A stretch of 64,000 nucleotides of DNA from Octopus sinensis (Eukaryota), in assembly GCF_006345805.1 (NCBI RefSeq), contig NC_043013.1, positions 22,568,001 to 22,632,000 on the forward strand, written 5' to 3'. Within the stretch, counting starts at the first letter, position 1; every line of letters starts with the position of its first letter. The translations under genes were made by a program, and so were the position numbers. Positions 26,401 through 64,000 of this stretch are shown here, piece after piece. The notes beneath the pieces were generated by a model. It searched no databases, was not told the DNA's origin, and saw only the letters and a program-made list of their open reading frames with translations.

Positions 26401-29400
26401 GAAATTTGGCTTCTATTTCTAGCAGGATCAGTGTCTCTGTAGAGTCTCTCTTATTAGCTCATTAAGTGTTTTAAGTGAAGTGCGTTTTTGTGAAGGGATG
26501 GTTTTGTATTGCGATCATGCATTCAAGATTCTAGACTGCTGTTTTATACTCATCCACTGAGTCTGCAACCCGAAAGGACCTGAGTTCAATTCCTAGCTGC
26601 AATCTGCCGAAGTACAAATGTGTGAGGGGTTGTTGTTTAGCCCCAGGTCATCTCACTTTGAGTATTCTAACTCATCTTTTTAGAAAAGTATGAGAATATC
26701 TAATGTGCCCTTTCCATATTTAAGATGGGGGTTCATGAATTTTAGGGTAAGTTCATTATATTTAGCAGACTGAGCAAATGTATTGCAACTCTTTTATTGC
26801 CTGCTGGGGTGTGGAGATCAGTTTCAGCAATGAAACCTGTGATAAACATTTGATTCGTTGTTAAGCCATTTCATTTGGCCATTGGTCAAGAGAGTGACGG
26901 GTTCCAGCAGGTCCACATCTTTCTGGACTTGAAGATGAAGCCACTGTGATGCCCCGACAACTTATTCATGGAAGAGCTATTTACATTGTTAATTTGTTAG
27001 AGAAAATGTTGAAACACTCGCATATTATCATTTCTTTACTTTTCACTAGAAATCTAAGGAATCAAAATGGTCTGTGATATGTTCTGGTGAATATTGTCAT
27101 GGTTCCCTACACAGGAACATAGCCATTGAAATTCTAAGGGAGAAAAGAGTCAATTCTATGGATTCTAGTGCATGACCAATTATGTTTCTAAATGTTTGTC
27201 TTTTCCCTTTATTTCAGGAAGTCGATAAAAGTGGTACTGGTTCTATAGGATTTGAAGAATTTGCAGCCCTGTTCCGTAACTTAATTCATGTGCCATCTGT
27301 AAGTTTTCTTCTGTTTTATCTGCTATATCTGTTACATCTGTCACATCTCTATAGCTTTTGGCTGCTGCTGAAATTCCAGCCTACTCCTTGACTGGCCCCT
27401 CTATATCTGTTACATCTGTCACATCTCTATAGCTTTTGGCTGCTGCTGAAATTCCAGCCTACTCCTTGACTGGCCCCTCTCATCAGTAAATCCCGTGTTT
27501 CAGTGATGTCTACAGCATCTTCCATTCTACTACTGCCTCTGGTTCTATTATGTAGAGGTAGATACCGCCAGAGGGTTGCTGAGGCTCAGAAGAGCTTAAC
27601 ATTAAACAGACAAAGGATAAATTTCTGTCTTTGCATATGTAATTCTAAAATGTTTATTATTCACAGATATCTATAATTTCACCTTTTATGTTATTCCTGT
27701 AGACTTTGGGCGAAAGCCCATTAATCCAATTTGTTCATTACTGAATTTTTTATGTGTGGCACCAGCACTAGAGAGGTTACCAAGTCATGAGAAAAAAAAA
27801 ATAAAGAGTTCCCTTCACCTTACATTGTCTCTGATTATCTGCCAGCAACTTTACAGAGTGTATTGGGTGAAAGCTCTTTTGTCTTGTTAGGGACAAAGTA
27901 ATCTTACCAGGGCTGGCACTTCTATAAAATGCACCCAATACACTCTGTAAAGTTGTTGGCAGATAATCAGAGACAATGTAAGGTGAAGGGAACTCTTTAT
28001 TTTTTTTCTCATGACTTGGCAACCTCTCTAGTGCTGGTGCCACAGTTAAGGTGTACTCTGTACAATCTGTAAAGTAGTTGATGTTAGGAAGAGCATCCAG
28101 CTGTTGTAACTGGGTCAAAAAGTAGAAACTACAAGCAAGATATGGTCTCCCTGTCTATCTTGGAGGACAGCAACTACAAATACAAAGTGGCCTGGATCAT
28201 GGGAAGAAAATGTAAACCATAGACAATGACAGATAATCAGTGAGTGGGTGGGTCCCTTTGCCTGCTAACAAGAATCTCAAATTCATTTCTTCGAGAATTG
28301 TTGTAACATTTTTTTCTTTTTTTTCTTTAAGAGGGAAATTTCAGTTACCTTTTACTTGTTTCAGTCATTAGACTGTGGCCATGCTGGGGCACCACCTTGA
28401 AGAATTTTAATTGAATGAATTGAACTCAGTACTTTTTTTTTAAGCCTGATACTTGTTCTATCGGTCTCTTTTCCCAAACTGCTAAGTTACCACAATGCAA
28501 ACAAACCAACACCAGTTGTCAAGCAATGGTGGGTGTAACAAACATAGACACACATACATACATACATTCAACCCTATCCCTCATTCATGGCTGTTGAAGT
28601 GCCTACATCTGGTAAAAGTACCTACTACCTTAATTGCTGCTACAGAGAGACTCAGAAAGGCATGGAAAACAATACTTACCCTTACAACCGAGAACCGAAT
28701 ATTTGTTTCTGATAGTATAGGCATTACAAAGGGAATATTCCAGGGAGATAGTCTTTCTGTACTTCTTTTCATTTTGGCACTGAATCCATTATTGTTCCTA
28801 CTGCAAGACTTTTCTCAGGTTCCAAATGTGGATTTGTCTGTGTTAACTACATCCCAAACATGAAGCCTTGTATCTTTGTTGGAAACTGGTTCCTTCCTCA
28901 GTGGAAGATTTATAATAATTAAAAAATAGAAGAGACATGCATAAATTATCATCATCATCATATGTCCATTTTCCATGCTGGCATGGTTCAGACGGTTCAA
29001 CTGGTGTCTGGAAAGCCAGGAGGCTATACCAGGCACCAGTCTGATCTGGCAATGTTTTTACAGCTTGATGCCCTTCCTAATACCAACCACTCCGAGAGTG
29101 TAGAGGGTGCTTTTTACATGCTACTGGCACAGAGGCCAGAGGGCGCTGGCATCGGCCACGTTCGGATTGTGCTTTTTACATGCCACCAGCACAGGGACCA
29201 CAACTCCAATTTCCATTTTATTGTGATTTGATTTCATTTGATGTTGATGTACTTGACTCAGTAGGTCTCCTCAATCATGGCATGTTGCCCCACGACCCAA
29301 GGGTACTTTTTGAGTTGGCTGGTTATGCGACACTGGCATAGGTTACAGCTATGATCTCACTTTATGACAGGCTTCTTTCAGTTTCTGTCTACCAAATCCA

Positions 29401-45360: not shown

Positions 45361-48300
45361 GAGATGTTGACTGATAAATGGTGGGGAATTAACAGAGAGT
45401 TTGTTCTAGCATTGGTTACAATACTTTCTATCATTTGTTGTGATACTGTGTGCTCTGAGTTCAAATCCCTTCATGGTCAACTTCATGATTTCCCTGGGAA
45501 GTGAGCAGAGAAGTGGCAAATCAATAGTAAAGGTTTCCAATACAAGGTTGTGGAATGGATGGAATTCTTCGACTGACAGATGGAATGTCTTTTGGTATTT
45601 TTACTGACTGTGTAGTTTCTAAATTCTAATTCTTCTTCTTCTGTTTGTGACTGCATTCATGGAAATATTCTTTGGTTCTGTCAAAACATTGACTGTGATG
45701 CTACAAGTTCTTACAATATTACATACAAGTGTGTTCATACATATTTTATTTACATAATGGTAGATTATTGGCAGCCAACCGTTGTTACAGTGCCAATGCA
45801 GTGTTGCTGCATCATCATCATCATCAGTGTCATCGTTTTTACATTCTTTATTTCCATGCTACAGCCATTGGTTAAGTAAGATTTTCCAACCTGGGATCCA
45901 CACATACCTAGGGGGTCTATGATTTCATCATCATCATCGTTGTTTAACATCCATTTTCCATGCTAGCATGGGTTGGATGGTTTGACTGGGGGCTGGCAAG
46001 CCAGTAGGCTGCACCAGGCTCCATTCTGATCTGGCAAAGTTTCTACAGCTGGATGCCCTTCCTGATGCCAACCACTCCGAGAGTGTAGTGGATGCTTTTT
46101 ACGTGCCACCGGTATTGGAACCAGTATCCTGTCTCGGTCTCCTGTCATTGCCTCTGTGAAGCCCAACATTCGAAGGTCTTGCTTCACCACCTCATCCCAT
46201 GTCTTCCTGGGTCTTCCTCTTCCACAGGTTCCTTCCACTGTTTGGGAGTGACACTTTTTCACGCAACTTTCCTCATCCATCTGTACTACATGACCATACC
46301 AACACAAATGTCTCTCCTGCATGCCACATCCAATGCTTCTTACGTCCAACATTTCTCTCAGGGCGCTTACACTCTGTTGTGTGTGCACACTGACATTACA
46401 CATCCAGTGGATCATGCTAGCATCATTTCTTTCAAGCCTGCACATGTCCTCAACAGTCATGGCCCATGTTTCACTCCTGTGAAGCATAGCTGTTCGCACA
46501 CATGCATCGTACAGTCTACCTTTCACTCTGAACAAGAGGCTCTTTTTTGTTACCAGCAGAGGTAAGAACTTTCTGAACTTTGCCCAGGCTATTTTTATTC
46601 TAGTGGCAACCTTCTCAGAGCATCCACCCCAACTACAGACTTGGTCACCTAAGTAGCTATTCTACTGCTTTTCTACATGTTAAAAACTGACAGAAATCTT
46701 TACACTGAGAACTTCAAACACTTAGAGTAATGGCTCTCAACCATTTTTGGCTTAGTGACTCCTTTCAATAAACAGTATTCTACAAATGCCCTCTCCACGG
46801 ATTATTTCAATAAAACAAAAGCTAATATTATATATTAGTTTAACATTAGTCCTCTCTCTCTGCTCCCTGATGACATAATTGCCTACTTATATATTCTAAT
46901 CCCAAAGATGTTTTTAAATGAAAATACAGGAGGAAAAGAAAACTAAGGCTTTGGAAATTTGATGAAGACTTAAGGAGAAAGACTAAAGCTGAGAGAGCGA
47001 GAGAGATTAGGAAGTTACATATTGAAGAGACAATTTAAATAATTAATTTATGAAAGTACATATTAGTGATAATGTATGTTAGATCTATGAATGAATGAAG
47101 CAATCAAAAGATCAAGAGAATATCTTAGAAGTGCTTAAGGTGGGTGCCAATAGTAACCAAACACTGGAATGAGCTGCATGAAAGTCTGGGAGGGGAACAT
47201 GTGTGATAGGTATTTTATTTATATATATATATATATATATTTATATATAGGGAGAGTTTACGAAAAAAACAAAAGACGAAGACAGGTGGTGTACAAAACA
47301 AACAGATGTATATATATGGTATGGCCGGAAGTGGATATTATGAATGGGTATTTTGCCCTGGGCAGTAGAGATAGCAGTAAGAAGCCGTAATGGGTGTGTG
47401 ATTTGTGTTTAAAATTTTAAATGCTGCTGTATAAAAGTTATTTATAATTCTTCATTCGCATTTTACCTTTCGACTGAGAAATGAAACAAGTTTGTAGTTT
47501 GTTAATAAATTTAGCCTCTTGAGTTGAGAGGCATTTGACAAAGCTGGGATCCATAAGAAAATTAATATAGAAAATATGGGTTCATGGTATTGAAAAGGTT
47601 GTGAAGCACCTGTCTGCAACATTGCTGAGTGAATGAGCTACTCAAGATGCTGATTTAAAGTGGCTCAGAGCATTAATGGTGGGATTGCAGGGGAAGAGCC
47701 CAGTGATATCAAGAATATCTGCATCTCTAACTTCACTGTACGAATCACAGTCGTCATAGCAGCAATTAAGACAAGCCTAACTTTATGGATGTTAAAATTG
47801 AACCTGCACTTGGTGCTTGAGCAAGTCTTTCAACAGCTGTTATACTCACCACTAATTTATGAGACTGATAAGAGAATGGAATATGCAGTACATTTGTCAT
47901 TGTACCCAAAGAGTAAGACCAACTTATGTATTGAGAGTTGCTGATGATGATGACGACGACGATGATCAATTAAGATTTTTAATTGGCTTGTCATAATTTA
48001 ATTCCCTGAACCACCATTGAATGTTAAATTAATTACTTATAATTTAGTCCTGTTGCTTATCACCCAAATATTTGATTGGCTGCATTACCAAATGTCTTCT
48101 ATCTAATTTGGTTCCGAGTTATCACATGTTTGTTTCATTACTCATTTAATTTGATGAAGAAACTGTTGTAGCAACCATTATCCCCTGTTTGATTTGATTG
48201 CCTGAGTTGTCAAGTATTTGACTATTAGTGACATTGTTCTAAAGCAATGGTTCTTAGCCTTGGAGGGTACTGTGAGATTCCAAAGGGACAGCAAATGTCA

Positions 48301-54200: not shown

Positions 54201-57200
54201 GCCAGTGGCATGTGAAAAGCACCATTCGAGCGTTATCTTTGCCTGCATCGCCATACTGGCACATGTGCCGGTGGCATGTGAAAAACAACATTCGAGCGTG
54301 GTTGTTGCTAGTGCCGCCAGACTGGCTCCCATGCAGGTAGCATGTAAAAAAACCTTTTGAGCGTGGTCGTTGCCAGAACTGCCTGAATGGCCTTCGTTCC
54401 AGTGGCATGTAAAAGCACCTACTACACTCTCAGAGTGCTTGGCATTAGGAAGGGCATCCAGCTTTAGAAACTTTGCCAGATCAGATTGGAACCTGGTGCA
54501 ACCTTCTGTTACACCATGCAACCCATGCCAGCATGGAAAGCAGATGTTAAGCGATAACATTGATGATGATGATATACATAAGGTTATCAACCACCTCACC
54601 AACAACAACACTGAACACCTTTTTGATCTCCATGTGTCTAACACACGTGGACATGCCTACAAAGTCAGAAAACAATACAGCTCCCATGACTTTCGGAAAC
54701 ATTTTTTCACGCTCAGAGTTGCTGAAGCATGGAATAAACTGCCTGCGTCAGTTGTTGACTGCCATGACACTGCATCTTTTAAGGCCCTCATACTTTCCGA
54801 AATCCGCCGAAACTACACCTGATTATATATACACTTTAGATGAGTTGTAGTGCACCTGAGCACTGTACACAATTATTATTATTATTATTATTATTCATAA
54901 AGTTCACATTATTAGAATAATCAGCATTTAATCAACGAACGGCCAAGAAGTGATGGAAACTATTCACTGGATTGTACTGACATGATGTGACACTCCAGTT
55001 GTATAGTTCTGACAAAGATCCTGCTGTTTCATTGTTCTCTTCTGGTTTGTCAAAGGAAGATTAATTTTATGAATTACTGGATGAAAACAACAATTCTGGC
55101 AGGATTACACACAATCATTTTATCAGCAAGTTGCACCGAATTCAAATCCAAGTTACTTCAGGGTAGGTCACAGACCCCAGCCACCCTGCTCATCTCAGTC
55201 AACATTGTCATTGAATCTAAACTCGGGTTCTGATTGCAAATTGGACCTTATGGCTCTTGTACATCATCCATTCCTTATTTAAATTTATCATACACGTATG
55301 CCATTTACCATGTATTTTTCTTGAGGGTTTCCCCTAATTATGTATTTCTTTCATCAGGTGGTTTTATGGTGATATTGATCGAGTTACTGCTGAAGATAAA
55401 TTGAAAAGAATTCCACGTGATGGTGCCTTTTTGGTGAGGAGAAGTGAAACAGACCAGTATGCATTTGTGATATCCTTCAGGTAAGAAGAGGAAAGGACAA
55501 GATTTCTTTATTAAAACCATATTTGTGAAGTGTACATATATGTATACTAGCAGTATCGCCCGGCGTTGCTCGGGTTTGTTTCGACCCTTTAGAATTGGAA
55601 TTTTTGAAAAGTAAAAATTTTGCATTACGTAGCTTGTTATTCTCTTTAAGTGAACATTTTTCTGGTTGAAATACACCGAAAAATGGCAACACAGCAGTCA
55701 CAAAATCGTAAAAAATAGGGATTTTCATAGAAAAAAAAAAGCACCTTTTTGATGTAAATAATTTTTGGTCTTAACATGGTCTGATTTGAATTCTTTCTTC
55801 TACAGAAGGAAGAGCAAGCCTTCTGTCATACTTTCAATTTTGGTCAACTTGCACCACAGGGTCTCGGAGGAGATAGTGTTAGTTGAAGGCTACTAAACCT
55901 GCCATACACAGACAACTTCAGCTTAATATATATATAGAGAGATGAGTGTATGGGTAAATAGGGAGAACCCTCTTCATTTAGGGTTTTTATGCATGTATAA
56001 AATTTAAATGTGGCCGACAATAGGTGAGATATGACAATAATAACAATAGGGGAGATATGATAATAATAACAACAATAATAATAAGAAATTAACTGAGATG
56101 TGAATAATTTAATTGCTTTTTGTAAATTAAAATTGTGTTTTTTTTTTCCCCCATCTAAATTCTTCAGGTGTGAAGGTAAAATAAAGCACTGCCGAATTAA
56201 ACAAGAGGGTCGCCTCTTCACGATCGGTACTGCACAGTTTGAGAGTTTACTCAACCTGATAAAATATCATGAAAAGAATCCTCTCTACAAGAAAATGAGG
56301 CTTAGGTACCCAGTCACGGACCAGTTAATCATGAGAATGGGTATTGTAAGTAGAACTTTTGCTTTCAGTTCTTAGAATTCTGGTTATTTTCTCCCCTGCC
56401 ATAGAGACCAGCCCAATCATTACCACAACCCCCACAACCACTCCATGCATTTCCTATACTGTCCACTCCTGTGAATTAGTGATGATTAGATGCTATTTAG
56501 ACACTCCTGGCGCCGTACAATGTACATACACACACGTTATATATATCTAATACAAATAAGAAAATAGAGAAACAATTTAGTTGGTTCATCAGCTTTAGAT
56601 ATTAGAATGTTGACTTACTTATTTATTTATTTAACAAAAACGAGAACCTTAATAACATACATATTGAATTTTAATGTATGTATGTATGTTATTAAGGTCC
56701 CGTTTTTGTTAAATAAATAAATAAGTCAACATTCTAATATCTAAAGCTGATGAACCAACTAAATTGTTTCTCCATTCTCTTATTTGTATTATAAATTAAT
56801 GGTAAAATATTTCTTAACCTTCACCCATTTAATACAATAAATAAGTTAATTATTGCAATTAAAAACAGTTGTGTATTTAATAATTTGGGTATTATACCAA
56901 CACTATATTGGATAAGTATTATCCCTTAGTGGGTTGGATCCACAACCCCTAACTTACTTGGTGTGTATGTATATATATATATATATATATATCTCCTGGT
57001 ATCGACCAGACCATTCAGTGTTGATATACATCACTGGCCACAGTGCACTTCACATTGTTTGTTTTAGCTTTCAGATAATGCTACCCATCTGGTGAGGTGA
57101 GCAGGCCAAACAACCCCCTGCCCCACTGATTGGAAAACTGTTTCAATTCAGGGTTATATATTTACAGCGGAATGGAGCTGTGTGAAAATGAAGTGTCTTG

Positions 57201-57594
57201 CTCAAGAACACAACATGCTGCTCTGTTCAGGAATTGAACACACAATCTGAACATTGTGAGCACAACAATCATAACCACTAGGCCATTGCACCTTCACACA
57301 CAAACACACCCATATACATATATATATACTTATATATATATATATAAATATAATTTAGGGTATCTAAGAGACACCACCACACTGGAAATAGCAGTCCAAA
57401 TAGCAGCACCTGGTGTTGTATGAGCATTTAATTTAGTTTTAGAGTCAAGTTTTGACTGCTATTTCCAGCGTGGTGGTGTCTCTTAGTTACCCTAAATTAT
57501 AATTTTCAATAATTATTACCTTTGAAAGGTTTTTATTCCCATGCTGGCCACCTGATAGGATCAGTATTTTAAATATCGATCTTATCCTTATTGA

Positions 57595-57672
<78 letters not shown>

Positions 57673-60218
57673 CTTGGCTGTGTGCTCAAGTTCATTCCTC
57701 CATCCTGTGACTTTTGGTTCAGTTCTGTTGTGAAGTGTTTTCTACTGAACTTGGGAAACAAAGCCATGCAAATGGATTTGGTTGAGGAAACTGAAAGAAG
57801 CCTACTATGTGTGTGAGTGTGCATGTTTGTTTGTGTGTCCATGTGTTCACCGTCATACTCCTCCATGTATCACTGAGCGACAAGTAGTGATGTCGTCGTC
57901 ATTTCTCTTCTCAACAAATCGTTTGTTGATTTTGTGTGTTCAAAGACATGGAATTTGAACACATGTTGACCTTTTATTTTAAAAATAGTTAACGGTTGGC
58001 AACAGGAAGAGCACCCAGCTGTGAAGCAGTGCCTTTTGAATACATTTGTGTAACCCATGGCAATGTAGGACACACACAAAACAAATGAATCCTGACTGGA
58101 AGGAAATGTGTGTAGGGCCTGACAGAAATCCAACTGTGCTGCTGCTGCTCAACTGTAGTTTAGTTTGGGGACCGTGACACCACGGAGGCATCTCCTGTGT
58201 TCATGCTGGAAATTAAACTTATGTTTATGTACAGTATTGTCAACCTTACATCATTATTTGGAAATTGTTCAACCACACCTTTCATACATATTTAGGATTG
58301 AGACCCCCTTCGGTCATGAATGACCATGGGATTGCACCTAGAAAGTCTGGGCAAGGTTGTTTATGGAAGACCAGCAGTCCCCCATGCATACCAGCCTCTC
58401 CTCCTCTCCATGCCACCGATGTTATCCAAGGGAAAAGCAAAGGGGCCAATACAGCTTGGTGCCAGTAACATCACAACTCATTTCTACAGCTGAGTGAACT
58501 GGAGCAACATGAAATAAAGTGTCTTGCTCAAGAACACAACACACAGCCCAATCTGGGAATCGAACTCACGATCGTAAGCTCGACACTCTAACCACTGAGC
58601 CATGTGCCTTCACATATAGTTAGGATAATTACAATCAATATCCAATGTGGCAATGCATTCTATTTCTGCCCATCGAAACCGAATGCCTTTTTGTTCTGTG
58701 TATGTTGTTTTTGGGGTTTTTTTGTTTCCAGAACTAAGTTTTTCATCTGATGACATTTTACCAATTTCTCAGTAAGACACTAGTTTCTTTAAAAGTATCA
58801 GCGACTCATGTTGTTGGATGTTTCTCTAATTGTAGGAAAAGAGTTCAATCCTGCTCTGATACATACAATATGCACAAGTTTAGTTTGTACTTTATACTTA
58901 AAGTATTGTTTTGTAATTTGATAATTTAATCAAAAACTGGACTTCTACTTCTGCTTCAGACAGAATTTCCCAGTGACCTGTTGGTAGATGACTAGATGGT
59001 CAAAGGGATAAATGAATCGTGGCCAATGCCAGCGCCACCTCGACTGGCTTCCGTGCAGGTGGCACGTAAAATGCACCAATCCGACCGTGGGCGATGCCAG
59101 CCTCGCCTGGCACCAGTGCAGTTGGCACGTAAAAAGCACCCACTACACTCACGGAGTGGTTGGCATTAGGAAGGGCATCCAGCTGTAGAAACATTGCCAG
59201 ATGAGACCGGAGCCTGGTGCAGCCTTCTGGCTTCCCAGATCCCCGGTCGAACCGTCCAACCCATGCTAGCATGGAGAACGAACGTTAAACGATGATGATG
59301 ATGATGATGAGCATAAGTTTTAAACTGCCATCAGATGTACTGGTCACATGACCTCTCTCTGTCAATCAGTTTTTAATTTGCTGACCATTACTGAGTTATG
59401 ATGATTATAGGATGTAGTTCGTTAATGTGCAGCAATCACTACTTATTAAGGTGCCTTGGCTCCCTACAAACAGAACAGTGCAACCTTCAAGGTTTGCTGA
59501 CATCTGTTTTACATCCATTTTGTCCCTGTTGCTGATATCAACTGCAAACAGGGATTAAGTGGGCCCAAATGAAAAACTGTCGTTTTAAATTCTTTTGGAT
59601 TAACTGAAGGTGATGCTTGGCCTCCCAGTCACTTAATTAATTTGTTCAATGTAACAACTTAATGTCCTTTAAACTGACCCCTGATCTACTATTATTGATC
59701 CTAAATCAGGTCAAATGGCAGACGAGTTTCTGGAACCACGAGTATGGTGACCTGAAAACTGATGTTTGGTTGATTTTAATTTTGTTCAGCTTTCATGCAG
59801 CCATGTTAACCTGTTTGTTGTGGGTCTGTTATTACACTAGTTGGCATGTTTGTGGTCCTTATTGCTTGACTGTAGTTCCAGAACACACCTTGCCACTTTC
59901 AAAACCAAATGCTTAGAGTTTGTCTAATGTCATTTCAAGTTGATTCTTCCTTTGTAGGCACCAAATGCTGGTTCAATGCATCAAGAGCTCTATGTTAATC
60001 CCAATGATTTTACTTCAAAGGTAACCCTAAGTATTTGTAGAATGCTGCCAGTAGTCGTCTCTAATTTCATTTGTCCTCTGACTCTGTGTTTTTTGTGTGT
60101 ATGTCCGCCCGTCCATGGGGCAGCATGACCCTTCTTCATCATATAAAATGTATTTGTTTATTATTTGCACTATGCATATGTATTTAATGTGGTAGCTGTA
60201 GTAATGACCAGTGTGTGT

Positions 60219-60259
<41 letters not shown>

Positions 60260-62831
60260 ATATGTAAACGTGCATTTCTGAAAAACCAAAAACTTTGTTG
60301 TTGTTGTTCTTATTCAGGTTTCCTGTTTCTCGACATAAAAAAAAAATATTCCTAATTTCCATTTGTGTTTCTAATCCAATGCAAGCTACATGTGAAGTAT
60401 CCAAACTCCCACATTAATATATTATATTAACTTGTAGTAATTGTTTAATAACTACTACAATATAATAACTAACTTATAATTTACTTGTAGTGTAGGTATT
60501 TTTGACAAAAGCCATGGGACCGTTAGAGTGTGTGGGGTGGATGGATATCGTATTAGCAGCAGTTTTTCTAACGAAACATCTTCCACTGAAGTCTTTCCCT
60601 GAAATGTAAACCCTGTATTAAGTAACAATGATGGGGGCTGAGGTTAAGGGTTGCCCATGCAGTAGATTCTCCTACTCACTACATTATCTGTTTAAGTACA
60701 GGGGGTTGGGTTAGGGGTTTTAGGGCTTTCATAGGGGTTCTGGTATTATTCAGATTGATGCCATTAACAGTTTGCTTAAAATGTTGCAAGTCAATAGTTT
60801 CCTGGAAGATAAATGCAGGGAGACAATTCCAGAGGAACGATGTTCTGGAAAGGTCCTAACTCTCAGAAGAGAGACTAATAAGGGTTATATCACAGCCAAG
60901 GGTGACTCTGTATCTTGGCAGTTGTGGGCATTTGAGCCTGCAATTTCTGGACAACATCAACCATGATGTTTCTGAGAAAGTTTCTTGCATTAACTAGCAC
61001 CTTGTCCAGTGGCTTATTAGTTTCTCATCCATTTAACTGGAGTTGGATTTTAATTGGTTATAGCTTGTGATAGTGTTAATCTAATAAATGTCCAGAAATT
61101 CTCTACCTTCGTGTGTGTGTGTGTGTGTGTGTGTGAACATAGTATGGTTGAATGGTCAAGAAGTTGACTTTACCCTCATAAGGTGTTGGTTCAATCCCGT
61201 TGGTAGCAAGTGTCTTTTACCTTAGTCTTGAGTTCAGCCCAAGCCTTGTGGTTTCGACTGAATGACAGAAACTGTACAATCTGTTCGTCTGAATGGCTTG
61301 GCTACCTGTGATACAAAAGGTGTAGTCAAACCACATCACACTGTGGGCCACATGATGATTCTTCTTGAAAATTACATTAAGGGTAGATATGTCTGTGGAA
61401 TACTTAGCCTGAGCAACTGAGTACTCCCCCATCAAAACTGACTGAAATACATTTATTCTACTCTGTGTATGAGGGAGAGAGAGAAAGACAAAGAAAAAGA
61501 TTTTCTTCAGTCACATGTGAGTGATACTCCATTGTTGGTAAGAAAGGTAGTGATGTATATTTTTGGTTCTTTTAACTCCATTCTGTAATTTTGTGAAGAC
61601 ACCAACCCATATACATGTACACACATGTGCGTGCAGTTTACAATTGATTAAATTTTGTTTCTTAAAATCGTTCCATAATATGTCTAAGAACTTGAGAACC
61701 AAATTCACAAATATTCTTTCAGGAATATTCTCCGTATGACAAACAATCATCTTTATGGGTGTTTTTCTTTTTTTTTTCTTTTAAATTGATGCCATATTTT
61801 TAAGGTGTTTATTTGATTAGCTTCAACCTATCCAAACTAGAAACAAAGTTTACCACTGAAGAATTTATTCCATTATTGCAATGAACACAAACTTTAAACG
61901 ATTCCTTCCAATTTTTCCTTTACATTCCATCTTGTTTGTTTCAATTCTTGAAAATATTTTTTATAATTTAAAAAGGGAAAAAAGATCTTTGTTTTTTATC
62001 TTTTTTTTCTCTGTGAAATAGAATTTCAAGAGTGATATTTTTTTTCTTTTATGTCAATATTTTATAAAATTATATTCTTTTTTTTTCTACTTGGAAACAT
62101 TAATAATGATAGTGATTATAATAGTAATAATAAACTAAAATATTACGAGGATGAGTAAAAAGGTAATGCCATTTTGTTTAGGACAGGTATAATTACCAAT
62201 ACAGGACCATGTATCATACATCAAAATGAAGCTGGTTCTCTGAGGATCACATCCTTACTCCTCAACATAGTCACCGTTTCTCTCAATAGTAATGTTCCAC
62301 CTTTGAATGAGAACATATATCCCTGCCCTGTAAAATTCTGTTGACTGTTCTTTGAGCCACTTCTTCACTACAGTTTTCACTTCCTTGTCACTGGAATAAT
62401 GTTTGCCTCCCAAACCCTCTTTCATGGGACTGAAGAAATGATAGTCCAGTGATGAGGAAGTGAAAACAGTAGTGAAGAAGTGGCTCAAAGAACAATCAAC
62501 AGGATTTTACAGGGCAGGGATACATGCTCTCATTTGAAGGGGGAACATTGTTATTGAGGGAAACAGAGACTATGTTGAGAAGTAGTGATGTGATCCACAG
62601 AGGACCAGCTTCATTTTGATGTATGATACATGTTACTGTGTCGGTAATTATATTTGTCCTAAACAAAATGGCATTACTTTTTGACTCACCCTCGTAATTA
62701 GTATATATAATTAGTATAACGCATCTGATTCTTAACCTGCGTCCGTTTTACCACATGTGGCTTTATAGGAACCTGATGATGGCAATATCCATGGCGATGA
62801 GATCTATTACATGCCCAAGTACACCTCCAAG
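6316..62831 (+). CDS. PLCG1: Phospholipase C-gamma (PI(4,5)P2 phosphodiesterase gamma), partial multi-exon gene lacking first exon and SH3/Y/C2 exons
   Basis: 20 GT-AG exons (sum 2063 nt) join in one frame without stops, then either of two 63-nt linker exons; domain order PH, EF, X box (SSHNT, IELDCWDG, THG, SIENH), split PH, SH2 (FLVRES), SH2 (FLVRRS) is diagnostic of PLC-gamma. Symbol denotes co-orthology to vertebrate PLCG1/PLCG2. Confidence 0.97.
7394..7639. mobile_element. Long-TIR MITE (~93-bp arms)
   Basis: 7394-7486 is the near-perfect reverse complement of 7547-7639; second copy at 18742-18974. Confidence 0.8.
7742..8005 (+). mobile_element. tRNA-derived SINE with tgtccttgagcaagacactt core (degenerate)
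   Basis: A/B-box-like head ggcctagtggtt...gagttcaattccc; body similar to 30015-30339. Confidence 0.6.
8860..9087. mobile_element. piggyBac-like MITE, second family
   Basis: TTAA-CCCTTTAG ... CTAAAGGG-TTAA; relatives at 11245-12011 (interrupted) and ~14728-14923. Confidence 0.8.
10532..10589. repeat. Perfect 27-bp palindrome, 4-nt spacer
   Basis: gagggattctaaaatgcaccatgtctt-taac-aagacatggtgcattttagaatccctc. Confidence 0.97.
11306..11400. repeat. Perfect 47-bp palindrome, 1-nt spacer
   Basis: 11306-11352 is the exact reverse complement of 11354-11400. Confidence 0.97.
11551..11646 (-). ncRNA. Penelope-type minimal type I hammerhead ribozyme (near intact) within a PLE fragment ~11521-11765
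   Basis: Minus strand ttttgg-CUGAUGA-GUAC-(52 nt)-GUAU-GAAAC-aauu-GUA/cugaaa; palindromic stem III ACAAUUGU. Confidence 0.7.
12790..12935. repeat. (CT)n/(CCT) polypyrimidine microsatellite
   Basis: Direct reading; similar tracts at ~15520-15670 and ~62870-62930. Confidence 0.95.
13020..13200 (-). mobile_element. Penelope-like element terminal fragment with decayed hammerhead (13105-13143)
   Basis: Minus strand cttt-CUGUUGA-A-GAGC-guag-GCUC-aAAAC-aua; truncated relative at ~47230-47330. Confidence 0.55.
13375..14030 (+). mobile_element. CR1-like LINE ORF2 C-terminal fragment (dead)
   Basis: [35 protein letters not shown] ... [11 protein letters not shown] with frameshift and stops. Confidence 0.85.
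14500..14710 (+). mobile_element. tRNA-derived Octopus-type SINE (family B)
   Basis: ggcaagctggcagaa...gttcaaatcctgccaaggtcaactttac...aaagtaccag; other copies ~19636-19845, 20455-20672(-), 21215-21395, 25555-25752(-), 25785-26003(-), 36112-36287, 49455-49650. Confidence 0.8.
15027..15120 (+). CDS. PLCG1: PLC-gamma exon (PH C-terminal helix): [31 protein letters not shown]
   Basis: tttcag acceptor, AG|gtctct donor, 94 nt phase 1-2. Confidence 0.92.
15830..16265. repeat. Compound (CATA/TGCA/TG/TA)n microsatellite
   Basis: Direct reading; source of the spurious MYVC/HTYI ORFs. Confidence 0.95.
17297..17344 (+). CDS. PLCG1: PLC-gamma exon: [16 protein letters not shown]
   Basis: ttacag acceptor, GT|gtgagt donor, 48 nt phase 2-2; WLRKEFY matches PLCG1 WLRKQFY. 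Confidence 0.93.
17575..18265 (-). mobile_element. RTE LINE 3' end with diverged ~150-bp internal duplication
   Basis: Minus strand GLTEEMT-like ORF end, 3' UTR and (GAT)n tail; 17927-18050 repeated at 18146-18265. Confidence 0.8.
18742..18974. mobile_element. Long-TIR MITE (~107-bp arms, 19-nt spacer), same family as 7394-7639
   Basis: 18742-18848 is the near-perfect reverse complement of 18868-18974. Confidence 0.85.
19384..19465 (+). CDS. PLCG1: PLC-gamma exon (EF region): [27 protein letters not shown]
   Basis: tttcag acceptor, CAA|gtaagt donor, 82 nt phase 2-0. Confidence 0.9.
20738..21156 (+). mobile_element. R4/Dong-like non-LTR retrotransposon 3' end
   Basis: [32 protein letters not shown]...[10 protein letters not shown] (restriction-like endonuclease end), then 3' UTR and (TAA)n tail. 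Confidence 0.8.
21613..21771. repeat. 34-bp inverted repeat, MITE-like
   Basis: 21613-21646 vs 21738-21771, one mismatch. Confidence 0.85.
22645..23406. repeat. 29/30-bp minisatellite, ~26 units (gtcagacttgctggt[g]gtctaacttatcc[c/t])
   Basis: 24 occurrences of tcagacttg counted plus two degenerate leading units; no spacers. Confidence 0.97.
23774..24261. mobile_element. hAT-like non-autonomous element containing a Penelope-derived insert
   Basis: Termini cagtggtttccaac / gttgaaaaccactg; no clean 8-bp TSD seen; related ends at ~39625-39860 and ~52320-52560. Confidence 0.55.
23905..23956 (+). ncRNA. Penelope-type hammerhead relic, sense to PLC-gamma
   Basis: gucu-ucGAUGA-ag-GGAUAUU-(7 nt)-AAUAUCC-ua-GAAAC-agcu-GUA/agac; core positions 3-4 deviate from CU. 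Confidence 0.55.
27218..27298 (+). CDS. PLCG1: PLC-gamma exon (EF hand): [27 protein letters not shown]
   Basis: tttcag acceptor, TCT|gtaagt donor, 81 nt phase 0-0; EF-hand-like [12 protein letters not shown] loop. Confidence 0.93.
27323..27480. repeat. Perfect 78-bp tandem duplication
   Basis: 27323-27400 is identical to 27401-27478. Confidence 0.95.
27755..28044. repeat. ~114-bp inverted duplication with 62-nt spacer
   Basis: 27755-27869 vs 27932-28044; only two substitutions and a poly-A length difference seen. Confidence 0.93.
28572..28805 (+). mobile_element. R4/Dong-like reverse transcriptase fragment
   Basis: [12 protein letters not shown] ... [21 protein letters not shown]. Confidence 0.8.
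29739..29788 (+). CDS. PLCG1: PLC-gamma exon: [17 protein letters not shown]
   Basis: tttcag acceptor, AG|gtaagc donor, 50 nt phase 0-2; needed to keep frame between flanking exons. Confidence 0.85.
30015..30339 (-). mobile_element. tRNA-derived SINE, well preserved
   Basis: Head ggaggcgcaatggcccagtggttagggcagcagactcgcggtcataggatcgcagtttcgattccc with A and B boxes, followed by non-tRNA body. Confidence 0.85.
30563..30774. mobile_element. mariner-derived MITE
   Basis: Degenerate TIRs ggggtactgaaaaagttcctgtcttt / aaagccaggaactttccaacgcctcctcgta. Confidence 0.6.
32941..32989 (+). CDS. PLCG1: PLC-gamma exon: [16 protein letters not shown]
   Basis: tttcag acceptor, AGA|gtgagt donor, 49 nt phase 2-0; FQLFLLQEQ matches PLC EF-region FxxFLxxEQ. 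Confidence 0.92.
34839..34940 (+). CDS. PLCG1: PLC-gamma exon: [34 protein letters not shown]
   Basis: tttcag acceptor, GAG|gttagt donor, 102 nt phase 0-0; EPYF motif. Confidence 0.93.
35019..35954 (+). mobile_element. mariner DNA transposon, internally deleted, transposase pseudogene
   Basis: ~31-bp TIRs tcaggtcttcccataagttctgtctga / tcggacagaacttatgggataacctga+TA; [33 protein letters not shown]; frameshift, stops, C-terminal catalytic part missing. Confidence 0.93.
36587..36702 (+). CDS. PLCG1: PLC-gamma exon (X-box start): [39 protein letters not shown]
   Basis: tcacag acceptor, AC|gtaagt donor, 116 nt phase 0-2; [17 protein letters not shown] with first catalytic His. Confidence 0.97.
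37131..37216 (+). CDS. PLCG1: PLC-gamma exon (X box): [29 protein letters not shown]
   Basis: ttgcag acceptor, T|gtaagt donor, 86 nt phase 2-1; [15 protein letters not shown] as in vertebrate PLCG1. Confidence 0.97.
37728..37848 (+). CDS. PLCG1: PLC-gamma exon (X box): [40 protein letters not shown]
   Basis: ttccag acceptor, GA|gtaagt donor, 121 nt phase 1-2; DCWDG and second catalytic His (THG). Confidence 0.97.
38754..38839 (+). CDS. PLCG1: PLC-gamma exon (X box): [29 protein letters not shown]
   Basis: tttcag acceptor, G|gtgggt donor, 86 nt phase 2-1; [11 protein letters not shown] motif. Confidence 0.96.
38992..39074 (+). CDS. PLCG1: PLC-gamma exon (X-box end): [27 protein letters not shown]
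   Basis: ttccag acceptor, AAG|gtttgt donor, 83 nt phase 1-0; LPSPNQLxxKILxK. Confidence 0.96.
39475..39526 (+). CDS. PLCG1: PLC-gamma exon (X-linker): [18 protein letters not shown]
   Basis: ttctag acceptor, A|gtaagt donor, 52 nt phase 0-1. Confidence 0.9.
41608..41678 (+). CDS. PLCG1: PLC-gamma exon (split PH N-half): [23 protein letters not shown]
   Basis: ttgtag acceptor, CAT|gtaagt donor, 71 nt phase 1-0; matches PLCG1 DISNSIKNGILYLED. Confidence 0.95.
41903..42019 (+). CDS. PLCG1: PLC-gamma exon (split PH N-half, acidic linker): [39 protein letters not shown]
   Basis: tttcag acceptor, GAG|gtgaga donor, 117 nt phase 0-0; WxPHxFVLT motif. Confidence 0.95.
42875..43047 (+). CDS. PLCG1: PLC-gamma exon (nSH2 first half): [58 protein letters not shown]
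   Basis: poly-T/tcag acceptor, TT|gtaagt donor, 173 nt phase 0-2; [11 protein letters not shown] and [12 protein letters not shown]. Confidence 0.97.
45925..46655 (-). mobile_element. 5'-truncated RTE LINE (ORF C-terminus fused to 3' UTR tail)
   Basis: YLGDQV...RIKIAWAKF...[16 protein letters not shown]...WYGHVVQM...[17 protein letters not shown], then family C tail and (GAT)n. Confidence 0.92.
46656..48863. repeat. ~265-bp inverted duplication (46656-46920 / 48601-48863) around a 1680-bp spacer
   Basis: Arms compared by eye differ at about five sites; no TSD. Confidence 0.93.
50204..50462. promoter_or_regulatory. Candidate intronic promoter/enhancer motif cluster
   Basis: GGGGCGGGG 50204, CCAAT 50308, GCGCATGCA 50377, CGGAAGTG 50387, TGAGTCA 50456 in non-repetitive intron sequence; motif evidence only. 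Confidence 0.3.
52632..52790 (+). mobile_element. Penelope-like terminal repeat fragment with hammerhead (52700-52743)
   Basis: acac-CUGAUGA-A-GGCUG-(10 nt)-CAGCC-GAAAC-auu/gugu. Confidence 0.7.
53849..54049 (+). CDS. PLCG1: PLC-gamma exon (nSH2 second half): [67 protein letters not shown]
   Basis: ttctag acceptor, GA|gtaagt donor, 201 nt phase 2-2. Confidence 0.97.
54572..54895 (+). mobile_element. CR1-like LINE 3' end with (ATT)n tail
   Basis: [39 protein letters not shown]. Confidence 0.88.
55358..55480 (+). CDS. PLCG1: PLC-gamma exon (cSH2 first half): [41 protein letters not shown]
   Basis: catcag acceptor, AG|gtaaga donor, 123 nt phase 2-2; PRDGAFLVR. Confidence 0.97.
55546..55943 (-). 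mobile_element. Non-autonomous Helitron/Helentron-like element
   Basis: Minus-strand 3' end cccgagcaacgccggg hairpin followed by ctagt; other end tctctatatatatattaagctgaag. Confidence 0.55.
56168..56345 (+). CDS. PLCG1: PLC-gamma exon (cSH2 second half): [59 protein letters not shown]
   Basis: cttcag acceptor, ATT|gtaagt donor, 178 nt phase 2-0; EGKIKHCR and PLYxKMxLRYP. Confidence 0.97.
56548..56791. repeat. ~110-bp fold-back inverted repeat, ~19-nt spacer
   Basis: 56548-56662 vs 56682-56791. Confidence 0.92.
57349..57501. repeat. 52-bp inverted repeat (MITE-like), 49-nt spacer
   Basis: 57349-57400 vs 57450-57501, three mismatches. Confidence 0.88.
58290..58615 (-). mobile_element. tRNA-derived SINE with tgtgttcttgagcaagacacttt core
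   Basis: Minus-strand head ggcacatggctcagtggttagagtgtcgagc...gagttcgattccc; relative at ~56995-57298. Confidence 0.75.
59958..60020 (+). CDS. PLCG1: PLC-gamma cSH2-SH3 linker exon, copy A: [21 protein letters not shown]
   Basis: ttcttcctttgtag acceptor, AAG|gtaacc donor, 63 nt phase 0-0; LYVNP resembles PLCG2 MYVDP (Y759) and PLCG1 FYVEA (Y783). Confidence 0.9.
62146..62694. mobile_element. Fold-back mariner derivative made of two transposon 3' ends in inverted orientation
   Basis: TA-cgagg ... cctcg-TA; arms 62146-62394 and 62446-62694 (249 bp each), 51-nt spacer; encodes mariner C-terminus [39 protein letters not shown]. Confidence 0.92.
62769..62831 (+). CDS. PLCG1: PLC-gamma cSH2-SH3 linker exon, copy B: [21 protein letters not shown]
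   Basis: ctttatag acceptor, AAG|gtaatg donor, 63 nt phase 0-0; starts EPD like the PLCG1 linker exon (EPDYG) and ends TSK like copy A. Confidence 0.85.
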
Positions 62832-62896
62832 GTAATGTGGTCACCTGCAATTGTCACACATACTACAGCTTCTCTCTCTCTCACTCTCTCTCTCTC

Positions 62897-62932
<36 letters not shown>

Positions 62933-64000
62933 AGCTCAGCTTTTTTCATTTACTCTTTTTTTTCCTTTCACTTATTCTCATGCCCTCTCACTCAGTCTTT
63001 CTTTCTGAAATTGTGTAACATCAGCTTCTCCCTCTCTTAGCTTACTCCTCCTCATTCATTTATCGTTCTCTCTCTCTCTCTCTCTCTCTCACTCTCAGTA
63101 CATCCAGGGTAATTTGCTCATCTGGAATTCTTGTCCATACTACAGCAAGATTCTTTCTCCCTTGCTCTCCCTCCCTCTCTCTCTTCTCGCTTTCTTTCCT
63201 CCATTCTCTCTCTCTTTCACCCAGTCTTCCTCTCTTGCTCTTTCTTCCCCAAATATGTCTTCTGTTAGATGTGTATATATTACTTGAAGACTTCCATTAG
63301 CTGTGTATGTGTGTGTGTTTGTGTGTATACATATATATATATATGTGTGTTTGTGTGTATACATACATATATATATATGTGTGTGTGTGTGTGTGAGTAT
63401 ATAAATATATATGCGTCTGACCCATGCAAGCACGGAAAACAGATGTTAAACGATGATGATGATGGTGTGTGTGTATATGTATGTATATGTGTATATATAT
63501 ATGTGTATATATATATGTGTGTGTGTGTGTGTATATATGAAGATCTTAATTAGTTGAGGACCTTTCTTGTTTTTCCAATATCACCCTTATCTCTCTCTCT
63601 CTCCCCCTCTCACCTCTTTCTTTTCCTTCTCTCTGTCTCTGATTTCAACCCATAACACTTGTTACTCTTCTTTTCAAAGCCTCCTTTTTTTCCACAGACT
63701 TCCCCTCTCTCTCTCTCCCTCTCCACATACCTACCTAACCTACACCCCCACCCCTTCTATGTCTCTAATATCATCCTTTGGTCTGCATTAATCTTCTTTC
63801 TCGTTATCTTCATTATCTCCAAATTGTCCGTTTAGTCTTCGATTTTAATCCTGCCGCTCTCTTCGCTCCACCTGTGCATATTTAAACACCACCTTCACCG
63901 CCGCCAACAGCAATTCCTAATGATACCACAACTACTACCAAGACTATCAGACTTTGGCCAATGGCACCAAATATTCTTTATCATTGCTCATGGCTAACTT

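What the first reader, a model, noticed from the sequence alone, without database searches (positions are those of the whole stretch)
59958..62831. Tandem-duplicated activation-tyrosine exon in PLC-gamma: candidate mutually exclusive exons that swap the phospho-switch
Seen: after the last cSH2 exon come two exons of identical length (63 nt) and phase (0-0), each with AG/GT sites and a donor AAG|GTAA. They align as [21 protein letters not shown] / [21 protein letters not shown] (shared P2, G5, H8, E-[LI]-Y, P, [FY]TSK). Established: this cSH2-SH3 linker carries PLCG1 Y783 / PLCG2 Y759, whose phosphorylation engages cSH2 in cis and releases autoinhibition; vertebrates encode it in a single exon. 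Inference: an old exon duplication, diverged but with both copies kept open and spliceable, gives two isoforms with different activation switches (or a tandem double linker if both are included). The 2748-nt intron between them is too long for steric exclusion, so any exclusivity needs RNA structure or splicing factors. I know of no description of this in PLC-gamma but could not search.
Basis: partly seen in the sequence, partly recalled or inferred. Interest (0 to 1): 0.9.

Follow-up and report, generated by a model that had tools for sequence, protein, structure and literature searches.

The report
Two alternative PLC-gamma activation-switch exons
In this (probably molluscan) phospholipase C-gamma gene, the short exon that carries the activating tyrosine is present twice in tandem, and related species' annotated isoforms use one copy or the other but never both, so the enzyme probably comes in two versions with different on-switches.

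Summary
Exon A (59958-60020) and exon B (62769-62831) are each 63 nt, phase 0-0, with AG/GT sites, and lie downstream of the last cSH2 exon of a PLC-gamma gene.

Both are homologues of the cSH2-SH3 linker exon. Against a profile built only from other species, A is the best and B the next independent candidate among 1508 exon-like intervals in the window.

Six other invertebrate loci have the same two-exon layout. The first exon is conservative (pY+1 = V/I/M) and the second is divergent (pY+1 = T/H/Y).

Corals, oligochaetes, arthropods, a tunicate and vertebrates have one copy.

The decisive evidence comes from the closest full-length relative, a RefSeq species grouping with the clam Tegillarca. 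Its isoform X4 equals X1 except that one linker module replaces the other. Three RNA-seq transcripts and the Tegillarca gene model carry only the B-like module. None of 39 spliced PLC-gamma sequences carries two.

Mutually exclusive use is therefore well supported by homology, but it was not tested in the window's own species. The mechanism of exclusion is unknown: steric, frame/NMD and U12 routes are excluded, and no competing RNA structure was found.

I found no description in the literature.

The parts
55358..55480 (+). First cSH2 exon ([40 protein letters not shown], then a split R codon). Boundaries were read by eye from the AG/GT sites.
56168..56345 (+). Last cSH2 exon ([17 protein letters not shown]...[15 protein letters not shown]). 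Its donor ATT|gtaagt is the shared upstream donor for exons A and B.
   Evidence: The exon boundary after the cSH2 domain is conserved in more than 60 invertebrate genomic fragments.
59958..60020 (+). Linker exon A, 63 nt, phase 0-0, encoding [21 protein letters not shown]. It is the conservative 'type 1' switch module (Y-V-N-P).
   Evidence: It is rank 1 of 1508 candidates against the foreign profile. It is closest to L022 ELYINPNDFSSK and L095 exon 1 [11 protein letters not shown] (0 of 20000 shuffles reach the score).
60021..62768 (+). Intron between A and B, 2748 nt.
62142..62698 (.). Large inverted repeat with 257-nt arms, 88% complementary, and a 43-nt loop. It ends 70 nt upstream of exon B's acceptor. 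It is probably a foldback or MITE-type insertion, and any effect on splicing is untested.
62769..62831 (+). Linker exon B, 63 nt, phase 0-0, encoding [21 protein letters not shown]. It is the divergent 'type 2' switch module (Y-Y-M-P).
   Evidence: Its best match is the Tegillarca granosa linker EPVGDDDIYGEDIYHSPNDLVSK (1 of 20000 shuffles).
63097..63145 (+). Decayed partial third copy: the last ~14 nt of exon B, its donor and ~35 nt of intron (76% identity over 51 nt). The exon body is replaced by a (CT)n repeat, so it is not a usable exon.
   Evidence: family D7; E 7e-6 within the window

Best explanation
Exons A and B are tandem duplicates of the single exon that encodes the cSH2-SH3 linker of PLC-gamma. 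This is the segment whose phosphotyrosine (human PLCG1 Y783, motif GFpYVEANPM) binds the cSH2 domain in cis and lifts autoinhibition.

Most likely each mRNA takes one of the two. That would give two isoforms that are identical except for about 21 residues forming the intramolecular cSH2 ligand.
- Exon A keeps the conservative ligand, Y-V-N-P, with an aliphatic residue at pY+1.
- Exon B carries a divergent one, Y-Y-M-P.
- The same contrast holds in every two-exon species seen: V/I/M at pY+1 in the first exon and T/H/Y in the second. Pro at +3 is kept in both.

Inference: the isoforms differ in which kinase phosphorylates the switch and/or in how tightly the phosphorylated linker competes with the catalytic core for cSH2. 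That would change the activation threshold or its duration.

Shown:
- the duplication
- conservation of both copies across species
- swap-type isoforms in a relative

Inferred:
- that this species also splices them exclusively
- the functional difference between the isoforms
- how exclusion is enforced, which is probably trans-acting splicing factors, since no cis mechanism is evident
For: 1. Anatomy: both exons are 63 nt, phase 0-0, with AG/GT sites, and follow the cSH2 exon.

2. Homology beyond chance.

3. The same layout occurs elsewhere.
- L095: [25 protein letters not shown], then VPSTSWRSSKGVYHNPNPFTTK about 2.8 kb downstream.
- L001-3, L004, L005, L016 and L036 also have two exons.
- A profile search finds exactly two copies in these loci and exactly one in L006, L007, coral-type and oligochaete-type loci.

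4. Purifying selection.
- Between L016 and L036 only the exons align.
- Their first linker exon has 8 nucleotide differences in 69 nt, all synonymous.
- Their second exon keeps its frame, splice sites and the Y-T-x-P-N core despite an indel.
- First exons of different species are much closer to each other (normalised score 0.61-0.77) than to the second exon of their own gene (0.21-0.54). The duplication therefore predates those species.

5. Splicing evidence in relatives.
- P0068's 90% cluster holds RefSeq XP_069111995 to XP_069112000. X4 equals X1 except that EAAEPGADYIYPNEFHK replaces VAEMDENRGAEGIYHQPNEFITK.
- The Logan RNA-seq transcripts L093 and L094 and three transcript proteins carry the second type only.
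- The Tegillarca granosa model KAJ8303617.1 carries a B-like module only.

6. All 39 spliced PLC-gamma sequences in which I could read from cSH2 to SH3 have one module. Three metatranscriptome mRNAs also have one.

7. The cSH2 ligand role of this segment is established (PMC3532599).
Against: - There is no transcript or junction evidence for the window's own species. Its ORFs are not on record and no close relative was retrievable.
- Exon B is the most diverged copy seen. It scores only 6.4 bits (E 0.58) against a profile of foreign linker exons. It has lost the PN[DE]F tail and the upstream Tyr.
- Orthology of A and B to the pairs in other lineages rests on about 20-residue alignments.
- RefSeq isoforms are automated models. 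I could not see the genome of that species to confirm that the X4 module is the neighbouring exon.
- Both exon lengths are multiples of three, so double inclusion or double skipping would stay in frame. Nothing in cis forbids them.
Confidence: 0.7

Rival explanations
1. One copy, most likely B, is an unused, slowly decaying duplicate in this species, and only the other is spliced into mRNA.
For: - B is the most divergent linker module found and has a weak leave-out profile score.
- A truncated third copy right behind it shows that duplicates do decay at this locus.
- A 557-nt hairpin element sits 70 nt upstream of B's acceptor.
Against: - B's 63-nt frame is open, and its AG acceptor and AAG|gtaatg donor are intact.
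- The Tyr and the Pro at +3 are kept.
- B specifically resembles the module used in the Tegillarca gene model (1 of 20000 shuffles).
- In the bivalve-type relatives, the second-type exon is the one seen in transcripts.
Confidence: 0.15
2. Both exons are included together, constitutively or as A versus A+B. The result would be a double linker with two cSH2-binding tyrosines in tandem.
For: - Both lengths are multiples of three in every species seen: 63/63, 75/66, 69/72, 69/66, 69/84 nt. Joint inclusion therefore keeps the frame.
- The intron between the two exons is long enough for ordinary splicing.
- No competing RNA structure was found.
Against: - No spliced PLC-gamma among 39 carries two modules.
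- The RefSeq relative shows substitution, not addition.
- A single linker module lies between cSH2 and SH3 from cnidarians to vertebrates.
- Both copies keep the N-terminal xPD and the C-terminal [TS]K that abut cSH2 and SH3.
Confidence: 0.1
3. The resemblance of B to a linker exon is chance, and B is not an exon.
For: B's score against the foreign-only profile is not significant on its own (E 0.58).
Against: - B is the best non-A candidate of 1508 by three different scores, with a clear gap to the next.
- It lies on the right strand in the roughly 4 kb directly after A.
- It has the same length and phase as A.
- It matches the Tegillarca linker.
- Six other loci have a second exon at the same place.
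Confidence: 0.03

Closest known systems
Vertebrate PLCG1/PLCG2 phospho-switch (Y783 / Y759 in the cSH2-SH3 linker)
   Same: Same gene family and same position: directly after cSH2 and ending ...[TS/F]K before the SH3 domain. It has the same Y-x-x-P type motif. In PLCG1 this motif, 781-GFpYVEANPM-790, binds cSH2 in cis and releases autoinhibition (PMC3532599).
   Different: Vertebrates have one copy per gene and two genes with different linkers. Here one gene carries two alternative copies. In the window, both copies have His where other lineages have the upstream Tyr (the ALY motif, Y775 in PLCG1).
RefSeq isoforms X1-X5 (XP_069111995 to XP_069112000) of PLC-gamma-1-like in an unnamed species close to the clam Tegillarca granosa
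   Same: The same linker block is swapped between isoforms: VAEMDENRGAEGIYHQPNEFITK in X1 and EAAEPGADYIYPNEFHK in X4. At pY+1 the contrast is H versus I, parallel to Y versus V in the window's B and A.
   Different: These are automated annotations, not a described finding. The species name was cut off in the tool output. The sequences are about 60% identical to the window's protein over nSH2-cSH2.
Tandem-duplicated mutually exclusive exons (for example PKM 9/10, FGFR2 IIIb/IIIc, SCN exon 5a/5b, ATE1 7a/7b, insect Dscam and 14-3-3zeta)
   Same: Adjacent homologous exons of the same phase and nearly the same length that substitute a functional module. This class is reviewed in PMC9013439, PMC9741552 and PMC6071210.
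   Different: None of the usual enforcing features was found here.
- The intron is long, so there is no steric block.
- Exon lengths are multiples of three, so there is no frame or NMD policing.
- Both donors are U2-type.
- No docking/selector complementarity of 12 nt or more was found.

Membership tests
PLC-gamma | X-box catalytic half followed by an nSH2-cSH2 tandem inserted in a split PH domain | tested here: met
   Window exons match X-box, split-PH, nSH2 and cSH2 pieces of other PLC-gamma loci. The spliced nSH2-cSH2 peptide hits full-length PLC-gamma proteins at E 1e-92. Those proteins carry PI-PLC-X, SH2, SH3, PI-PLC-Y and C2 domains.
PLC-gamma | SH3 domain, Y-box and C2 domain downstream of the linker | not testable with these tools
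   The window ends at 64000, and no SH3-like frame lies in 62832-64000. A look-up of a window ORF, meant to extend the locus, found nothing.
Tandem exon duplication | Adjacent exons with the same phase, similar length and significant sequence similarity | tested here: met
   Both are 63 nt and phase 0-0. A versus B is reached by 4 of 20000 shuffles. B is the best non-A candidate of 1508. Other species show the same pairs.
Tandem exon duplication | Both copies maintained by selection rather than one decaying | tested here: met
   This was shown in other species. Only exons are conserved between L016 and L036, and the 8 differences in the first exon are all synonymous. First exons are orthologous across four lineages. 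For the window's own B the evidence is indirect.
Mutually exclusive exons | Exactly one exon of the pair is present in each mature mRNA | tested here: inconclusive
   Met in a relative: X1 and X4 differ by substitution, three transcripts carry one module, and no member carries both. It also holds across 39 spliced PLC-gamma sequences. No transcript data could be reached for the window's species.
Mutually exclusive exons | A cis mechanism of exclusion: steric hindrance (intron under about 60 nt), U2/U12 incompatibility, or a frame shift with NMD on double inclusion | tested here: not met
   The intron is 2748 nt. Both donors are GTAA-type, not the /ATATCC or /GTATCC of U12 introns. Both exons are 63 nt, so the frame is kept on double inclusion.
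Mutually exclusive exons | Competing RNA structures (docking site and selector sequences) | tested here: inconclusive
   Flank-to-flank duplex energies are not below shuffled controls. No non-repetitive complementarity of 12 nt or more links different introns, apart from one chance-level 12-mer. No close relative was available to test conservation.

The most novel reading that the evidence does not exclude
The pair is an ancient, position-conserved alternative-switch system of lophotrochozoan PLC-gamma.
- The first exon keeps an optimal cSH2 ligand, with an aliphatic residue at pY+1.
- The second is a fast-evolving variant, with T, H or Y at pY+1.
- One gene would thus produce two enzymes with different kinase inputs or activation thresholds.
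- This would be the splicing counterpart of the vertebrate PLCG1/PLCG2 gene duplication. It would have been lost or replaced by gene duplication in other lineages, for example the several single-linker loci in gutless oligochaetes.
Probability: 0.3. Interest if true: 0.75.

Novelty: new member of a known kind. Interest (0 to 1): 0.6.

Why it matters
PLC-gamma activation hinges on one phosphotyrosine segment that competes with the catalytic core for the cSH2 domain. A gene that swaps exactly this segment by splicing is a natural experiment on how the sequence around the tyrosine sets kinase choice, switch strength and signal duration. It is also a clear case of alternative exons doing in invertebrates what duplicated genes (PLCG1 and PLCG2) do in vertebrates.

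The two modules can be compared directly with peptides and with isoform rescue. The swap already sits unremarked in automated RefSeq isoforms. Three literature searches found no description of it.

Tried and rejected
- **First protein search.** It returned only ORF-style read-throughs of the cSH2 exon from genomic contigs. It gave no isoform information by itself, but the contigs behind the hits supplied the comparative loci.
- **Extending the window.** An exact look-up of the exon-A ORF, meant to extend the window or identify the species, found nothing on record.
- **Identifying assemblies and runs.** I searched papers for GCA_022702875, the JAAUXT/JAAUYG/JACCDP/JAKGB prefixes, ERZ accessions, SRR19746226/7 and XP_069111998. 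There were no hits. L004's 'GNASFESL' signature resembles Capitella (P0157), but that is only a hint.
- **Competing RNA structure.** RNAduplex on 200-nt exon flanks against shuffles, and a search for exact complementarity of 12 nt or more between introns, found nothing beyond local hairpins and microsatellites.
- **Third protein search.** A profile of spliced constructs from all two-exon loci again returned mostly genomic fragments. No transcripts of those taxa turned up, but it did lead to L095.
- **Simple a/b signature.** I considered 'YM' versus 'YT' as a marker of orthology across all lineages and rejected it as too simple. Single-exon oligochaetes have YT and corals have YH.
- **Structure prediction.** I did not run it. 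Unphosphorylated linkers would be modelled with low confidence and would not discriminate between the hypotheses.

Full report
**1. The observation**

- The last cSH2 exon (56168-56345) ends ...[15 protein letters not shown]|gtaagt.
- After a 3612-nt intron comes exon A (59958-60020), tttgtag|GCA...AAG|gtaacc, encoding [21 protein letters not shown].
- After a further 2748 nt comes exon B (62769-62831), tttatag|GAA...AAG|gtaatg, encoding [21 protein letters not shown].
- Both exons are 63 nt and phase 0-0.

The gene is a PLC-gamma on the + strand. PH, X-box, split-PH, nSH2 and cSH2 exons lie upstream. The spliced nSH2-cSH2 peptide finds full-length PLC-gamma proteins at E about 1e-92. The SH3 exon lies beyond the window.

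**2. Is it more than chance?**

A and B align with a score that 4 of 20000 shuffles reach.

As a stricter test, I listed all 1508 'AG - open frame, 51-78 nt, phase 0 - GT' intervals on both strands of the window. I scored them against a profile built only from linker exons of other species.
- A ranks first (E 6e-6).
- B is the next independent candidate, but weakly (6.4 bits, E 0.58).
- B leads all remaining candidates by a clear margin in global alignment to foreign linker exons (27.8 versus 19.1) and to A (34 versus 20).
- B also matches the linker of the clam Tegillarca granosa's PLC-gamma (1 of 20000 shuffles).

B is therefore a real but strongly diverged copy.

**3. The same layout elsewhere**

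The cSH2 exon boundary is conserved in invertebrates. I fetched genomic contigs around homologous cSH2 exons and scanned downstream.

Loci with two tandem linker exons, always phase 0-0 with AG/GT sites:

| Locus | First exon | Second exon |
|---|---|---|
| L001-3 | TPDDNAVYGGAGLYMSPNDISSK | LPDCSAFDSDVYTNPNDLEHPPSQ |
| L004 | DPDDAAIYGSPDLYMNPNDFTTK | APDDNAIYSEQIYTNPNEFVSK |
| L005 | APDDTAIYGAPDLYMNPNDIAAK | EPDEEAIYSGDSYTEPNEWMSK (SH3 follows) |
| L016 and L036 | MPDESAIYGLPGLYMSPNEFTSE | NPNT...YT[ND]PN[ED]F... |
| L095 | [25 protein letters not shown] | VPSTSWRSSKGVYHNPNPFTTK, 2.8 kb apart |

Loci with exactly one linker exon between cSH2 and SH3:
- L006, L007 and L012
- coral-type loci (L011, L084-90)
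- many gutless-oligochaete metagenome contigs
- arthropod-type loci

Intron-free metatranscriptome mRNAs (L027, L073, L082) also carry one module.

In vertebrates there is also one copy. It is fused to the cSH2 exon in human-type PLCG1 (P0370). It is a separate exon in a PLCG2-type locus (P0056).

**4. Both copies are maintained**

- Between the related species L016 and L036, only the exons align and the introns do not.
- Their first linker exon differs at 8 of 69 nucleotides, all synonymous.
- Their second exon has diverged, with an indel, but keeps its frame, splice sites and the Y-T-x-P-N core.
- First exons of different species resemble each other (0.61-0.77 normalised score) far more than they resemble the second exon of their own gene (0.21-0.54). 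The duplication is therefore older than those species.

A consistent pattern emerges.
- The first exon is conservative and looks like the single exon of L006 and L007.
- The second evolves fast.
- The residue after the tyrosine is aliphatic in the first exon: V in the window, I in L022, L095 and RefSeq X4, and M in L001, L004, L005 and L016.
- It is T, H or Y in the second exon: Y in the window, H in Tegillarca, RefSeq X1 and L095, and T in L001, L004, L005, L016 and L036.
- Pro at +3 is kept in both.
- The window's A groups with the first exons of L022 and L095. B groups with the Tegillarca linker.

These groupings rest on about 20 residues and are suggestive only.

**5. Splicing evidence**

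No transcript of the window's species could be reached. An exhaustive HMMER search found the nearest full-length relatives.
- P0067 is Tegillarca granosa KAJ8303617.1.
- P0068 is a 1273-aa product of assembled RNA-seq transcripts (L093 and L094).

P0068's 90% cluster contains RefSeq isoforms X1-X5, XP_069111995 to XP_069112000. Aligning them gives the key result.
- X4 is identical to X1 except that EAAEPGADYIYPNEFHK stands in place of VAEMDENRGAEGIYHQPNEFITK, between ...LVEERGA and VKVKALYDY.
- This is a substitution of one homologous module for the other, the signature of a mutually exclusive pair.
- No member carries both modules.
- The three RNA-seq products and four of the five RefSeq isoforms carry the second-type module. 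So does the Tegillarca model, whose module EPVGDDDIYGEDIYHSPNDLVSK is B-like.
- All 39 spliced PLC-gamma sequences that I could read from cSH2 to SH3 have a single module.
- Isoforms from a tunicate, a mite and another RefSeq species do not vary in the linker.

**6. Mechanism**

The linker segment 781-GFpYVEANPM-790 of PLCG1 binds the cSH2 pocket in cis. It competes with the catalytic core, which releases autoinhibition (PMC3532599). A and B differ exactly in these contact positions, ELYVNPNDF versus EIYYMPKYT.

I infer two isoforms with different switch sequences. They would differ in kinase preference and/or in the affinity of the phosphorylated linker for cSH2.

How exclusion is enforced is open.
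- The intron is too long for steric hindrance.
- Both donors are U2-type.
- Exon lengths are multiples of three in every species, so frame or NMD policing is unavailable.
- I found no docking/selector complementarity.
- Regulation by trans-acting factors is the default guess.
- Leaky double inclusion cannot be excluded.

**7. Other features of the locus**

- A truncated third copy lies at 63097-63145. It holds the last ~14 nt of B, its donor and ~35 nt of intron, at 76% identity (E 7e-6). Its body is replaced by a CT repeat.
- A 257-nt-arm inverted repeat ends 70 nt upstream of B.
- Both A and B have His (codon CAT) where nearly all other lineages have the upstream Tyr.

**8. Novelty and verdict**

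Tandem-duplicated mutually exclusive exons are a known kind. This instance swaps the activation switch of PLC-gamma. It appears only in automated RefSeq isoforms. Three literature searches found no description.

- The main gap is direct junction evidence in this species.
- The claim that the organism is a cephalopod was not tested. The nearest full-length relatives are bivalve-type at about 60% identity.

Noticed in passing
window 63097-63145: Partial third copy of exon B's 3' end, donor and about 35 nt of intron (76% over 51 nt, E 7e-6). The rest of the exon is replaced by a (CT)n microsatellite. It is a relic of a further local duplication.
   Followed up: yes
window 62142-62398 / 62442-62698: A 257-nt inverted repeat, 88% complementary, ending 70 nt before exon B's acceptor. 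It is likely a foldback or MITE-type element and could affect use of B's 3' splice site.
   Followed up: partly
window 56543-56629 / 56710-56796 and 57334-57400 / 57450-57516: Two more local hairpin-forming inverted repeats in the intron after the cSH2 exon: 87 nt at 94% with a 51-nt perfect core, and 67 nt at 87%.
   Followed up: no
window 59979-59981 and 62790-62792: Both A and B have His (codon CAT in both) at the position where almost all other lineages have Tyr (the ALY motif, Y775 in PLCG1). This could be a parallel change or gene conversion between the copies.
   Followed up: no
window 45966-46661 (- strand), 28486-28860, 54361-54819: Open frames that look like reverse-transcriptase or retroelement fragments sit inside PLC-gamma introns. 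SINE-like repeats and abundant TA, CT and GT microsatellites occur throughout.
   Followed up: no
L017-L081 (JGI gutless-oligochaete metagenome contigs): There are at least three distinct PLC-gamma-type loci, each with a single but different linker exon: VPDAEALYTGELYTNPNDFSSK, DDTAIYTETLYTTPNEFLSN and DDDAIYDEAYYSTPNEFYSK. This may be gene duplication where other lineages use alternative exons, or it may simply reflect different host species.
   Followed up: partly
P0066 (578 aa): This protein carries two consecutive nSH2-cSH2 units of PLC-gamma type. It is either an unusual duplication or an assembly or gene-model artefact.
   Followed up: no
P0068 cluster, alignment columns 467-469, 534-539 and the C-terminus: The same RefSeq and transcript set shows other small alternative events: +/-TMP, +/-KPKGSQ before the nSH2 domain, and an alternative C-terminus in X5.
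   Followed up: no
window 56169-56171: The cSH2 strand motif FRAEGKIKHC, nearly invariant in other animals, reads [10 protein letters not shown] here (Ala replaced by Cys).
   Followed up: no
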